Positions 3,195-38,506 of a stretch of DNA of 64,000 nt are shown one piece after another. The stretch is from Stylophora pistillata (lineage: Eukaryota): positions 463,218-527,217 of the forward strand of contig NW_019217858.1 of assembly GCF_002571385.2 (NCBI RefSeq), written 5' to 3'. Under the pieces are notes generated by a model. That model had not been told where the DNA came from and made no database searches. It was given only the letters and a program-made list of their open reading frames with translations. A program made the position numbers and the translations under genes. Within the stretch, counting starts at the first letter, position 1. Each line of letters starts with the position of its first letter.

Positions 3195-5358
3195 ATGGCC
3201 GGATTTTCCTGCAGCGCGATTTTGGCTCTCTATCTAACCGCGATAACGTTTCCTGAAGGAGACGCTTATAGCTTGAATCGTGATAAAGCTACTACAGCGC
3301 CTCGCAGTAACATGTCGCTAGCACATGTCAGAACTCCGACGTCAATTCCCTCCACAAATGGATATGTGCAAGATCCGAAACCGATCAACAATGGAAACGG
3401 TATCTATTCCGAAGATTCAGAAATTTACAAACTGAGAATCGAGATTATCAAAGCCAAAATACTTAAAACACTTCAAATGGATAAACAACCGGTCGTCCAC
3501 ATAGAAAAAACAAAGGACAAAATGATCGCAGAGCTTCTCTTAAGTTTAAATCTCATTGATATGAGTGACGATGGCAACGAAACGGGAGAGTACGAAGACG
3601 GAAAGTATGACAAGACGAGTAAACTCATTGTTTTAAGCGAAAAAGGTAAGAGGAACAATTTTGCGTGCTCTAAGGGATAGAAACGAAGTCGCCTTTTGTC
3701 ATATTTCTCCACAGATAATTTCCATCAAGGTCATGGTCCGGCTTTCAAGTTTTCCCTTTGTTTTCAGGACGTTTTGATACCGGCATGGTCAAGAGGGCAG
3801 CAGTTAAATTATTTCAGCATATTTCTTGTCAATTCACTCGTCACCGCAGACAGCAGCAGAGCAAAGTTCAAGAGCTAATGTTGCAACAACTTCATAATTA
3901 CACAAAATCATTGCTGCCTTGACGTTTTAGATATTAGTTCTCGGCACCTCATACGGTGCTAACTGAAATAACGTTTTTTGTTTTGAATTTTGCCTCTAAG
4001 TTAATGACCATTGTGTTACGAACATTAGGAGGCGGAGTCGGTCTATATGTCCTTTCACAACTGCTCAGAGAGTGCTTTGGAAATTGCTTAAGTCCTGACA
4101 CGTAGGTTTAATGCAAAATGTGGAGAGAGGGTTAAACAATTTTCGTCATTCTTAACTTCTTCAACTAAGGAAACGTAATCTCAGAAACGTGCGATTCCAC
4201 CAGCTCACAATAACAAAATAATCCAGACAGTGCCTATGAGAGAATGTCAAGATTTATATAAAAGGAGGGGCACTAGGAACAATTGGTATTAATGCAAAAC
4301 AACGGTTAATAGTAGGTGAAACAATAGAAAGCATGCAAATAATTAGAAGCTTCAATTTTTTCACAGTTGACATGTATATGGTATACAAGCGTTGTGAAGA
4401 GACAAATAGGGCAAAAATTGAGCTTGGACTTTTTTTGCTGCTAACTGATTGGTAATCATAAATCCCATTTCAGTATGTTAGAAAACTAAAACAAACTTAG
4501 GCTAATAAACCGCTTTCTTTCTCTTCAATTTTAGCTGAGGTTTCACCTTCGAGATCAAAGCAAAATTTTTCCGAGAAGTTGATTTTCCAGTTTAATATTG
4601 AGCCGAAATCGCTGTCCAGTTCAGTGCCCTCTGCGTTTCTGTGGGTTCATAAACGGAAAAGCAGACAACACGAGCTAAGGAAGAAGACACTTCACATAAA
4701 GGACCCTAACAAAGAATCACCTAACAGCACCTCCGAAGTACCAATCAACAGAACGGTGACGGCCAAGTTAAAAGCAATACGAACCGGCTCAGGATGGGAA
4801 ATGATAGACATGAAAGAAATCGTTCGGCAATGGTTTAACAAGACAACTCAACAATACGATGCAAGGAATGGAACCGACAACGGCGTACACGAATTAGAAA
4901 TCTCTTGCTCGGACTGTGATTCGGACGTTGGTCAGCTAATTAACTCGCGGGGAAGATTACGGCCATTTCTCGTTATCGACTTGGAGAAGCCAAGAACACT
5001 GTCAAGGAAAAAGCGCCGAGTTAACAACTGCCCTGATGGGCAAGCAGTATCGTGCTGTCGTCGCAATTTCTATGTGGATTTCGGAAAAATCGGCTGGCAT
5101 TGGGTGATACACCCACAGGGATTCTATGCCAATTTCTGTGAAGGTTCTTGTAAGAGTCTTCATACGAGAATTACTAATGAACGAGCCATCATAATGCAAG
5201 AGGCAGTGAAAAAAAATCTGAGTCCACCTGGATTCACCGGCAGTTGTTGCAGCCCCACTAAGATGAAGCCCTTTTCTATGTTATATTGGGACGACGAGTC
5301 TAATATAGCAAAAAAAGACCTACAAGATTTAAAAGTTCACGAATGTGGCTGCTCTTAA
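3195..5358 (+). CDS. TGF-beta superfamily ligand, activin/inhibin-beta/myostatin-like; join(3195..3645,4535..5358), 424 aa
   Basis: Signal peptide MAGFSCSAILALYLTAITF; prodomain alpha-1 helix RIEIIKAKILKTLQMDKQP; RPFLVI motif; furin site RKKRR (5005-5019); mature domain with 9 Cys (C..CC..C...C..CC..CxC). A phase-1 GT-AG intron (AG|gtaag ... ttag|CT) joins the two ORFs in frame. Confidence 0.93.
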
Positions 5359-8300: not shown

Positions 8301-8522
8301 TTTCACTGATTAAGAGCCTAGGACGAGCTACAATAGGAAGAAAACATTTTTTTAGCAAGAAATCATGGGATTGAAAACAAACTCGAAATAACGACATCTA
8401 GCATTTTGATTAAAGATGGAGATTAGCGAAGGGCTGGAAATGGGTGCTTACGTAATTTCTAACAATTCGGGCAAGGATACTTTGCAATCCGGCTAACATT
8501 TGCTAGTAGAGAATTACTTATT

Positions 8523-8848
8523 TGATAAGTAGAGATTTGCTGAAGCAAAGGCATATAAAAAACCAGGAAAGATTTATTGCTGCTCGACATTTCGGAATCA
8601 GCATGACTCCATTATCAAGAGACTAGTTAACTAGCATGCAACTAAAGAAAGGTACAAGATAATTGAACGCACATTGAACGTGCAAACATTAATATTCCAT
8701 CCGCGCCAAGGTGTTTGTTTAGGCCGTTTATTGTAATTTATGCTTATCTTGTACCTTTCCTTAGTTGCATGCTAGTTAAGTAGTCTCTTAATAATGGCAT
8801 CATGATGATTCCGAAGCGTCGAGCAGCAATAAATCTTCCCTGGTTTTT
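8523..8848 (-). mobile_element. Penelope-like non-autonomous insertion: inverted ~105-bp arms plus ~35-nt tail
   Basis: Arms 8558-8662 and 8744-8848 are inverted repeats; unpaired tail 8523-8557; 13-bp direct repeat agaattacttatt at 8510-8522 and 8849-8861; hammerhead-like motif in each arm. Confidence 0.75.
8583..8621 (-). ncRNA. Minimal type-I hammerhead ribozyme-like motif (U3-A8 core variant)
   Basis: Minus strand reads CTC-TTGATAA-T-GGAGTC-ATGCT-GATTCC-GAAAT-GTC-GAG (helix I, core, helix II, GAAA, GUC site). A more decayed copy lies on + at 8785-8823. Confidence 0.6.
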
Positions 8849-9255
8849 AGAATTACTTATTCAGTATTTTAAAAGGATGACAAAAAACCCCTGGTAATTG
8901 ACTGACTAATTGCCAAATGAAAGCCGAGTGGTAATTGGGTAAGATTGAAGGTAGCATACCATGGGAAAATCTTACGTTTACGTTTGCGGTGCACCCACGA
9001 CTGACACGACCAATCGGTTTAATCTCATTCGAACAAATTGGCTCAGAGAGAGAGGGAGAGATTGTTCGAGATTATATCAATTTGCACTGAGATTTTTGCG
9101 CTGCGTCGACAACTAGGGAAGTGAAACGATTGGTTGCTTTCTAACCGTAAATCCCGAGAAACGGGCTCGAAAAACTATCTCCGAGTATTTTAAGTTTTCC
9201 GGCTAATCAGTCGTGTTCTGTGGCACGTTATCATAACTGGTGCTTTTTACTTAGG

Positions 9256-18487: not shown

Positions 18488-38506
<20,019 letters not shown>

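What the first reader, a model, noticed from the sequence alone, without database searches (positions are those of the whole stretch)
8510..8861. Hammerhead ribozyme motif with compensatory U3-A8 core inside a Penelope-style fold-back insertion
Seen: a 105-bp inverted repeat, a ~35-nt one-sided tail and a 13-bp flanking duplication; each arm holds CTC-TTGATAA-T-[6-bp stem]-GAAA-YGTC-GAG. Established: hammerhead C3 and G8 form a tertiary Watson-Crick pair that tolerates U3-A8 exchange, and Penelope-like elements carry minimal type-I hammerheads in pseudo-LTRs that are often inverted with a short 3' extension. The double change C3U+G8A is what a conserved fold predicts, and standard CUGANGA pattern searches would miss it. 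Inference: remnant of an ORF-less, ribozyme-bearing retroelement family.
Basis: partly seen in the sequence, partly recalled or inferred. Interest (0 to 1): 0.8.

Follow-up and report, generated by a model that had tools for sequence, protein, structure and literature searches.

The report
Decayed Penelope-like insertion with hammerhead motifs

Summary
There are two 105-nt inverted arms, an exact 13-bp flanking duplication and a one-sided 30-35 nt tail.

The element is not a DNA-transposon fold-back. Its relatives in the same 398-Mb genome share a fixed outer end and variable inner ends, which is the 5'-truncation pattern of retroelements. [quoted passage not shown] That ORF is 98% identical to a Pocillopora verrucosa protein. 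The family is therefore an autonomous Penelope-like element (PLE), not ORF-less.

The motif lies in the 3'UTR, about 66 nt after the stop codon. Related coral PLEs and at least 12 other families in this genome keep the same architecture: U3-A8 core, extra U, 6-7 bp helix II, GAAACGUC, 3-bp helix I. Helices I and II covary strongly. Genome-wide, paired cores (C3-G8, U3-A8) far exceed their reversed-pattern controls, while mismatched cores stay near control level.

The two window copies are decayed. The right arm has G5A and A15.1G; the left arm has lost the palindromic CG.

U3-A8 minimal hammerheads in PLEs (2014), minimal hammerheads in stony corals (2020) and the PLE tail (2021, 2024) are all published. 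This is a new member of a known kind. Self-cleavage was not tested.

The parts
8510..8522 (.). Left copy of the 13-bp target-site duplication AGAATTACTTATT
   Evidence: Exact direct repeat. Other two-armed insertions of the family have 7-14 bp duplications, mostly 12-13 bp.
8523..8557 (-). One-sided tail. The tail proper is about 8523-8552; 8553-8557 is the ATATA that closes the proximal 3' end and that the right arm lacks.
   Evidence: The same 30-33 nt extension is present at 29 of 60 distinct 3' ends of the family. It sits on exactly one arm in 13 of 14 two-armed insertions.
8558..8662 (-). Left arm: an inverted, 5'-truncated copy of the last ~105 nt of the PLE 3'UTR. The sense strand is the minus strand.
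   Evidence: Matches family 3' ends at 91-95% identity.
8583..8621 (-). Left-arm minimal hammerhead motif: CUC-UUGAUAA-U-GGAGUC(A)-loop-(U)GAUUCC-GAAA-UG-UC-GAG. The core is intact. 15.2-16.2 is UG instead of the family's CG.
8663..8670 (.). Head-to-head junction between the two arms. TTGAACG occurs twice here, at 8663-8669 and 8674-8680.
8671..8848 (+). Right arm: a 5'-truncated sense copy. It holds the last ~50 nt of the RT/GIY-YIG ORF (stop TAG at 8721-8723) and the 3'UTR up to ...CCCTGGTTTTT. It has no tail.
   Evidence: and (comparison with L040:2520-2694).
8785..8823 (+). Right-arm motif, decayed: CUC-UUAAUAA-U-GGCAUC..GAUUCC-GAAG-CG-UC-GAG. Changes are G5A, A15.1G and a C.U mismatch in helix II.
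8828..8833 (+). AATAAA between the motif and the 3' end. Its mirror copy lies at 8573-8578 on the minus strand.
   Evidence: Conserved in both subfamilies.
8849..8861 (.). Right copy of the 13-bp target-site duplication

Best explanation
Window 8523-8848 is a dead insertion of an autonomous, canonical Penelope-like element (PLE; reverse transcriptase plus C-terminal GIY-YIG endonuclease) of a pocilloporid stony coral.

Inferred mechanism, following published PLE work:
- The GIY-YIG endonuclease made nicks staggered by 13 bp, which produced the target-site duplication.
- Both exposed 3'-OH ends primed reverse transcription of the element's RNA near its 3' end.
- One priming started at the distal start site, giving the arm with the 30-35 nt tail. 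The other started at the proximal site, giving the arm without it.
- Both cDNAs stopped early, at about 140 and 180 nt, and were joined head to head. The result is a 105-bp inverted repeat with its 3' ends facing outward.

Each arm therefore contains the family's 3'UTR, which carries a minimal type-I hammerhead motif. The motif has a 3-bp helix I, a UUGANAA core (U3-A8 in place of C3-G8), one extra U, a 6-7 bp helix II closed by G10.1-C11.1, then GAAA, a palindromic CG, and UC followed by the cleavage site. It has no helix III of its own, so by the published model it would act as a dimer or with protein help.

In the live family the motif is under selection as an RNA structure. In this window both copies are mutated and are locked in a 105-bp hairpin, so they do nothing as ribozymes.

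Shown here: the anatomy, family membership, the ORF, covariation, and presence in polyA RNA libraries. Inferred: the priming mechanism and any catalysis.
For: Family structure:
- At least 91 matches in the own genome.
- Copies share a fixed outer end, but homology to L031 stops at many different inner points (898 to 1966), which is the 5'-truncation pattern.
- A young subfamily is 99.1-99.7% identical.

The ORF:
- L040 ORF 484-2571 is 695 aa. It hits RVT_1 at E 7e-9 and contains YVDD.
- Its C-terminus reads IVYEFKCNLC..GYVGYT and hits GIY-YIG weakly at E 0.016.
- The best homologue is 98% identical, an uncharacterized protein of Pocillopora verrucosa. The next are Stylophora, Oculina, Montipora and Porites proteins carrying RVT_1 + DUF8422 + HTH_animal, some with GIY-YIG.

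Insertion signature:
- There are two alternative 3' ends, 31-33 nt apart; 29 of 60 ends have the tail.
- The tail is on exactly one arm in 13 of 14 two-armed insertions.
- Target-site duplications are 7-14 bp, mostly 12-13 bp.
- Published PLE descriptions match this: an inverted 5'-truncated copy plus a 30-40 bp tail at one end (PMC8557442), and the tail being the sequence between two RT start sites (PMC11167929).

The motif:
- The same architecture sits 66-106 nt after the stop codon in PLEs of other corals at 59-74% protein identity. Helix II sequences differ but still pair, and a 46%-identity relative has the canonical CUGAAGA core.
- On 20 representative sequences, 84% of cells pair against 60% in shuffles. 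The covariation score is 0.646 against 0.194 (0 of 500 shuffles reach it), and slid registers score at most 0.17. Eleven of 12 pairs show a change on both sides.
- RNAalifold independently predicts helix I (3 bp) and helix II (6 bp).
- Genome-wide pattern counts against reversed-pattern controls: U3-A8 1489/248; C3-G8 2274/94; C3.A8 209/136; U3.G8 197/137.
- Between L040 and L071 the motif block is 37/39 identical, while the rest of the 3'UTR is 41/68.

RNA: polyA RNA-seq assemblies from four studies hold 93-98% of the sampled words of the L040 ORF-end and 3'UTR stretch that was searched. Coverage ends at the tail, and the unique flank has none.
Against: - No cleavage assay was run.
- Rfam hammerhead models give no hit even at E<=10.
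- Helix I is only 3 bp and there is no helix III.
- In the young subfamily helix II has an A.C mismatch (GGAGUC/GACCCC).
- Published PLE minimal hammerheads cleave poorly in vitro. In the Anolis PLE, hammerhead catalysis was not needed for insertion in vitro, and no RNA-seq read ends were found at the site.
- The 3-8 pair and G10.1-C11.1 in alignment A2 were imposed by the search pattern, so they are not independent evidence there.
- The representatives in A2 were picked by eye from the first 100 hits.
- Pattern counts are copy numbers, not independent events.
- The GIY-YIG hit of this ORF is below Pfam's cut-off.
Confidence: 0.85

Rival explanations
1. The conserved 3'UTR stem-loop is real but is not a self-cleaving ribozyme in vivo. 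It would serve as a recognition or positioning element for the PLE reverse transcriptase, or for 3'-end formation. The hammerhead-like core would then be retained for binding rather than catalysis.
For: - The motif sits 25 nt upstream of the proximal and about 61 nt upstream of the distal RT start site, next to AATAAA. Cleavage there would remove the RT start sites from the template.
- Published work reports that hammerhead mutants do not affect insertion in vitro, that cleavage needs the protein, and that no read ends occur at the site in Anolis.
- Minimal hammerheads have low in vitro activity.
Against: - The invariant positions are exactly the hammerhead catalytic core (U4, G5, A6, A9, G12-A14, A15.1-U16.1, H17).
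- The 3-8 positions switch only as a pair genome-wide. That is hard to explain by protein binding alone.
- The palindromic CG at 15.2-16.2 fits the dimer helix III model.
Confidence: 0.2
2. It is a miniature inverted-repeat DNA transposon (a MITE or fold-back element) with 105-bp terminal inverted repeats, and the hammerhead resemblance is chance.
For: A perfect-looking inverted repeat with a flanking duplication, and a long hairpin.
Against: - Most relatives are single arms that continue inward for up to about 2.2 kb into an RT ORF.
- Inner ends are variable, the tail is one-sided, and duplication length varies from 7 to 14 bp.
- No transposase was found.
Confidence: 0.02
3. It is a hairpin small-RNA (miRNA-like) gene, as suggested by the Rfam MIR8562 match.
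For: MIR8562 matches both strands over the full model, at 75-76 bits and E about 1e-13.
Against: - The score is far below the family's gathering threshold of 211.
- Both strands score equally, which is generic long-hairpin scoring. MIR8562 is a plant family.
- The hairpin is explained by the two-armed PLE insertion.
- Whether siRNAs arise from it was not tested.
Confidence: 0.03

Closest known systems
Minimal type-I hammerheads of metazoan Penelope-like elements, including the U3-A8 core variant of Schistosoma Cercyon PLEs (Cervera & de la Pena 2014, PMC4209133)
   Same: [quoted passage not shown]
   Different: The host is a stony coral. Helix I here is only 3 bp. In this genome U3-A8 cores are found in at least 12 sequence families and make up roughly a third of above-background minimal-hammerhead pattern hits. 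Cleavage was not tested here.
Canonical EN+ Penelope-like elements (Penelope/Poseidon, Neptune, Nematis), with insertion anatomy as in Craig et al. 2021 (PMC8557442)
   Same: A single ORF with RT followed by a C-terminal GIY-YIG domain; frequent 5' truncation; inverted or tandem partial copies; a 30-40 bp tail at one end; variable target-site duplication.
   Different: The clade within PLEs was not determined here. The L040 ORF (695 aa) is slightly shorter than its 718-aa Pocillopora homologue, and another repeat abuts its 5' side.
Poseidon PAc of Anolis carolinensis (Mob DNA 2024, PMC11167929)
   Same: Two adjacent internal RT start sites explain the optional tail. The coral family shows two alternative 3' ends 31-33 nt apart.
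   Different: In PAc the hammerhead overlaps the ORF start and has a C3-G8 core. In the coral family it lies in the 3'UTR with U3-A8. In the coral family the tail is on exactly one arm in 13 of 14 two-armed insertions, whereas the in vitro study saw no strand difference in start site.
Non-LTR retrozymes and type-I hammerheads of stony corals (Acropora millepora: more than 6000 motifs in 16 families; Cervera & de la Pena 2020, PMC7229834)
   Same: The same host group, with thousands of minimal or canonical type-I hammerheads per genome linked to PLEs.
   Different: Retrozymes are short tandem non-autonomous repeats with canonical, efficiently cleaving hammerheads that are expressed as circular RNA. 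The element here is a remnant of an autonomous PLE with a minimal motif.
Rfam hammerhead families
   Same: The same catalytic-core layout (helix I, core, helix II, GAAA, cleavage-site triplet).
   Different: No Rfam hammerhead model matches at E<=10. The motif lacks helix III and loop-loop contacts and has U3-A8.

Membership tests
Penelope-like element (canonical, EN+) | Reverse transcriptase domain in a single ORF | tested here: met
   L040 ORF 484-2571 hits RVT_1 at E 7e-9, 36.1 bits, above the cut-off of 29.6. YVDD is present.
Penelope-like element (canonical, EN+) | GIY-YIG endonuclease C-terminal to the RT | tested here: inconclusive
   The C-terminal 130 aa hit PF01541 at E 0.016, 15.9 bits, below the cut-off of 22.6. 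IVYEF...YVGYT with CxxC and H..H is visible. Several homologues at 55-61% identity carry PF01541 on record.
Penelope-like element (canonical, EN+) | Copies share the 3' end and are variably 5'-truncated | tested here: met
   Homology to L031 ends at 898, 942, 1033, 1072, 1207, 1272, 1338, 1446, 1549, 1619, 1672 and 1966 in different copies.
Penelope-like element (canonical, EN+) | Inverted or tandem partial copies, with a 30-40 bp tail at only one end of the insertion | tested here: met
   Fourteen two-armed insertions were examined, and 13 have the tail on exactly one arm. The exception, L003, has flanks that are reverse complements of each other. Direct pairs are seen in L074 and inverted pairs in L069.
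Penelope-like element (canonical, EN+) | Target-site duplication of variable length | tested here: met
   13, 12, 12-13, 12-14, 11-13, ~12, 12, 7-9 and 7 bp in nine insertions.
Hammerhead ribozyme, minimal type I (PLE-HHR) | Catalytic core N3-U-G-A-N-N8-A ... G-A-A-A ... U-H, with positions 3 and 8 able to pair (C-G or U-A) | tested here: met
   Met in both subfamilies' typical copies and in the window's left arm. Not met in the right arm, which has G5A and A15.1G. Genome-wide, paired cores are enriched and mismatched cores stay near control.
Hammerhead ribozyme, minimal type I (PLE-HHR) | Helix II closed by G10.1-C11.1 and supported by covariation | tested here: met
   Five inner pairs each show 5-9 sequences changed on both sides. 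Helix II cells are 85% paired. RNAalifold predicts the helix. G10.1-C11.1 itself was imposed by the search pattern.
Hammerhead ribozyme, minimal type I (PLE-HHR) | Helix I joining the 5' flank to the sequence after the cleavage site | tested here: met
   A 3-bp helix with 2-11 sequences changed on both sides per pair. A fourth pair is mostly unpaired.
Hammerhead ribozyme, minimal type I (PLE-HHR) | [quoted passage not shown] | tested here: met
   U (or A in canonical-core families) precedes G10.1. GAAACGUC dominates the hits. The window's left arm has UG instead of CG.
Hammerhead ribozyme, minimal type I (PLE-HHR) | Site-specific self-cleavage after H17 | not testable with these tools
   Only assembled contigs of RNA runs were available, and they cannot show RNA ends.
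Rfam hammerhead families | Match to a curated covariance model | tested here: not met
   No hammerhead family appears among matches at E<=10 in window 8400-8960.
DNA transposon / MITE | Both termini fixed, with terminal inverted repeats that are part of every copy | tested here: not met
   Most copies are single arms running into an RT ORF. Inner ends vary.

The most novel reading that the evidence does not exclude
In this coral the U3-A8 minimal hammerhead may be a functional, in-vivo-cleaving ribozyme that has radiated through a dozen or more PLE lineages. The low depth of RNA-seq contigs bridging the predicted cleavage site would then reflect real cleavage. In polyA libraries the bridging contigs are 15-25 times shallower than the contigs on either side. 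If so, this would be a natural, large-scale C3-G8 to U3-A8 core swap with an observable phenotype.
Probability: 0.2. Interest if true: 0.45.

Novelty: new member of a known kind. Interest (0 to 1): 0.25.

Why it matters
Mostly as annotation. It shows that the fold-back repeats of this coral genome with 12-13 bp duplications and one-sided tails are Penelope-like element (PLE) insertions, not MITEs or miRNA hairpins. It also shows that thousands of minimal hammerhead motifs, about 1,240 above background with a U3-A8 core, escape Rfam-style annotation.

The genome-wide contrast of paired against mismatched 3-8 cores is a clean natural confirmation of the C3-G8 tertiary pair.

The strict one-tail-per-insertion rule (13 of 14) constrains models of how the two strands are primed during PLE integration. 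None of this opens a new question.

Tried and rejected
- Rfam at gathering threshold on the whole window gave only a tRNA.
- Rfam at E<=10 on the region gave no hammerhead. It gave a sub-threshold MIR8562 match on both strands, judged to be generic long-hairpin scoring.
- The DNA-transposon/MITE reading was rejected once the 'solo arms' proved to run into longer copies and then into an RT ORF.
- L031, L032 and L034 have no long ORF. The ORF was found only by walking inward to the young subfamily.
- A PDB sequence search gave only a marginal group II intron RT hit.
- Look-ups of P0036 and P0003 were not on record.
- The octocoral relative L072 shows no motif within 330 nt of its stop codon.
- The first alignment, A1, put gaps inside helix II and was not used. 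It was replaced by the equal-length set A2.
- A search for an empty site or second haplotype of the left flank found none.
- Reads could be laid only as assembled contigs, so RNA ends and cleavage could not be read. The contig breaks near the cleavage site coincide with a subfamily indel and are not counted as evidence.
- The PLE clade (Penelope/Poseidon, Neptune or Nematis) was not determined.

Full report
**1. The observation**

Two arms, 8558-8662 and 8744-8848, are 105 nt long and 91% complementary. An exact 13-bp direct repeat, AGAATTACTTATT, lies at 8510-8522 and 8849-8861. A 35-nt stretch, 8523-8557, lies inside the left repeat and has no partner on the right.

The motif formula fits the left arm exactly on the minus strand at 8586-8618. 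A pattern for it finds 1 match in 64 kb against 0.05 expected. The right arm deviates at two core positions (TTAATAA, GAAG) and has one stem mismatch.

**2. What the element is**

A search of the window's own genome (398 Mb, 5513 contigs) gave at least 91 matches. Most are not fold-backs. They are single arms whose similarity continues inward well past the 'loop'.

Against one long copy (L031), homology in other copies stops at many different inner points, from 898 to 1966, while the outer end is always the same. A fixed 3' end with variable 5' truncation is the signature of target-primed reverse transcription, not of a DNA transposon.

Walking inward found a young subfamily that is 99.1-99.7% identical. 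Its copy L040 has a 695-aa ORF (484-2571). The ORF carries RVT_1 (E 7e-9), YVDD and a C-terminal IVYEFKCNLC..GYVGYT..H..H segment. That segment hits GIY-YIG weakly, at E 0.016, below Pfam's cut-off.

The best homologue, 98% identical, is an uncharacterized protein of Pocillopora verrucosa. The next are Stylophora, Oculina, Montipora and Porites proteins with RVT_1 + DUF8422 + HTH_animal, some with GIY-YIG. The genome is therefore a pocilloporid stony coral (inference), and the family is a canonical, autonomous Penelope-like element (PLE). The window's right arm starts within the last ~50 nt of this ORF, with the stop codon at 8721-8723, and runs through the 3'UTR.

**3. Tail and duplication**

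Sixty distinct 3' ends fall into an older subfamily A, to which the window copy belongs, and the young subfamily B. They end at one of two places 31-33 nt apart...CCTGGTTTTTT(A/C)TAT, or that sequence plus GCCTTTGCTT(C/T)AGCAAATC(T/C)CT(A/G)CTGATCA(A). Twenty-nine ends have the extension and 31 do not.

In 14 two-armed (inverted) insertions, 13 have the tail on exactly one arm. The exception, L003, has flanks that are reverse complements of each other, so it is a palindromic duplication or an assembly artefact. If each arm chose independently at about 0.5, exactly one tail in 13 of 13 would have probability of about 1e-4.

Flanking duplications are 13, 12, 12-13, 12-14, 11-13, ~12, 12, 7-9 and 7 bp.

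This matches the published PLE anatomy. Craig et al. 2021 describe an inverted 5'-truncated copy next to the main copy and a 30-40 bp tail at one end (PMC8557442). The 2024 in vitro study of the Anolis element identifies the tail as the sequence between two adjacent RT start sites (PMC11167929).

**4. The motif**

In the sense strand the family reads as follows: CUC, UUGAUAA, U, GGAGUC(A), loop, (U)GAUUCC [subfamily A] or (U)GACCCC [subfamily B], GAAA, CG, UC then the cleavage site, GAG, and AAUAAA a few nt later. It begins about 66 nt after the stop codon. It ends 25 nt before the proximal 3' end and about 61 nt before the distal 3' end.

Cervera & de la Pena 2014 define the metazoan PLE minimal hammerhead by these same features. 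[quoted passage not shown] They also report a U3-A8 core covariation in Schistosoma Cercyon PLEs, with about 1,300 hits (PMC4209133).

**5. Is the motif more than a look-alike?**

(a) PLEs of other corals carry the same architecture 66-106 nt after their stop codons, with different but pairing helix II and helix I sequences:
- L071 (74% protein identity): GGAGUC/GACUCC
- L069 (67%): GGCGCC/GUCGCC
- Oculina L070 (58%): GACGUU/AACGUC
- Porites L074 (59%): GAUGA/UCAUC, with helix I GAAU/AUUC

A 46%-identity relative, L073, has the canonical CUGAAGA core. Between L040 and L071 the motif block is 37/39 identical, while the rest of the 3'UTR is 41/68, about what unrelated AT-rich sequence gives.

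(b) In the own genome I searched the pattern N3-TGA-N-N8-A-N-G-N{12,18}-C-GAAA-NN-TH. Hits (forward + reverse) against the reversed-pattern control were:

| Core | Hits | Control |
|---|---|---|
| U3-A8 | 1489 | 248 |
| C3-G8 | 2274 | 94 |
| C3.A8 (mismatched) | 209 | 136 |
| U3.G8 (mismatched) | 197 | 137 |

Many of the mismatched hits are visibly single-base decay products of the big paired families. These are copy counts, not independent events. Even so, the U3-A8 hits include at least 12 different helix II sequences.

(c) I aligned 20 equal-length representatives: 17 with U3-A8 cores, including both window arms, and 3 with canonical cores. On this alignment 84.2% of cells pair against 60.1% in shuffles. 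The covariation score is 0.646 against 0.194 (0 of 500 shuffles reach it), and slid registers score at most 0.17. Eleven of 12 pairs show changes on both sides. RNAalifold, given no structure, returns helix I (3 bp) and helix II (6 bp).

Caveats: the 3-8 pair and G10.1-C11.1 were imposed by the search pattern, and the representatives were chosen by eye for being different.

**6. State of the window copies**

Relative to subfamily A:
- The right arm has G5 to A and A15.1 to G. Both positions are essential in hammerheads (established biochemistry). It also has two changes in helix II.
- The left arm keeps the core but has CG to UG at 15.2-16.2 and one loop change.
- The arms are 9% diverged from each other although they were made in one event, so the insertion is old.
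- Any transcript through the element would fold into the 105-bp hairpin.

These copies are relics.

**7. Expression**

PolyA RNA-seq assemblies from four studies of 'coral metagenome' samples hold 93-98% of the sampled words of the L040 ORF-end and 3'UTR stretch that was searched. Laid on L040, their contigs cover the ORF and 3'UTR up to 2730, which is the end of the tail. They cover nothing in the 830 nt of unique flank.

High-depth contigs stop at 2667-2673 and restart at 2678-2679. The listed contigs that bridge the predicted cleavage site (after 2669) are 15-25 times shallower. I do not count this as evidence of cleavage. Subfamilies A and B differ by an indel exactly there, which would break a de Bruijn graph; most pieces were not listed; and contigs cannot show RNA ends.

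**8. Surroundings**

The remnant lies about 3.2 kb downstream of an ORF that ends in a TGF_beta domain (4579-5358). Its flank is single-copy, and no empty site exists elsewhere in the assembly. The window also holds two-armed insertions of a second short repeat family, at about 21535-21872 and 29497-29726. That family is extremely abundant in the RNA contigs. Other first-stage notes cover it, and it is outside this finding.

**9. Comparison and verdict**

The element works like, and is, a PLE insertion. The motif works like, and by sequence and covariation criteria belongs to, the published PLE minimal hammerhead class with a U3-A8 core. Catalysis is untested.

The literature also reports more than 6000 minimal or canonical type-I hammerheads in the stony coral Acropora millepora (PMC7229834). 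A 2026 preprint links animal retrozymes to PLE terminal repeats.

The thing is a new member of a known kind, of modest interest.

Noticed in passing
L040:303-430; window 21535-21659, 21803-21872, 29497-29561, 29645-29726: A different short repeat family forms two-armed insertions in the window and carries ...CCGACGAAGGGCTAACGCTCGAAACGTCAGC.... A copy also abuts the 5' side of the L040 PLE copy. In four polyA RNA-seq assemblies it reaches contig depths of 7,800-93,500, far above the PLE itself, so it may be a retrozyme-like, very abundant RNA.
   Followed up: partly
L040:2667-2679: High-depth RNA-seq contigs stop and restart around the predicted hammerhead cleavage site. The listed bridging contigs are 15-25 times shallower. 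This is confounded by a subfamily indel at the same spot and by truncated output.
   Followed up: no
Family-wide (loci L002, L015, L016, L024, L035, L039, L042, L043, L049, L052, L057, L060 and the window): Exactly one arm of 13 of 14 two-armed insertions carries the tail, although about half of all 3' ends do. The two priming events of one integration are therefore not independent.
   Followed up: partly
L003:1471-1869 (G000:C149): A fold-back copy with tails on both arms has flanks that are exact reverse complements of each other for at least 30 nt. This is a palindromic duplication or an assembly artefact.
   Followed up: no
window 4579-5358 (+): A 259-aa ORF ends in a TGF_beta domain (Pfam E 1e-27). 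It is probably the last exon of a BMP/TGF-beta-like ligand gene, 3.2 kb upstream of the remnant.
   Followed up: partly
window 19824-19896 (-): A tRNA gene (Rfam RF00005, 39 bits). Another first-stage note places it inside a Penelope-type insertion.
   Followed up: no
G000 genome-wide: There are about 2,270 canonical-core minimal hammerhead pattern hits. They are dominated by one family: CTGATGATGACTTCCGCACAGGTTGTCGAAACGTC.
   Followed up: partly
L074:335-365 and 2888-2918; L069:1372-1404(-) and 3597-3629(+): In Porites lutea the motif flanks the ORF as direct repeats 2.55 kb apart. In another coral assembly the upstream copy is inverted. These are both classic PLE arrangements.
   Followed up: partly
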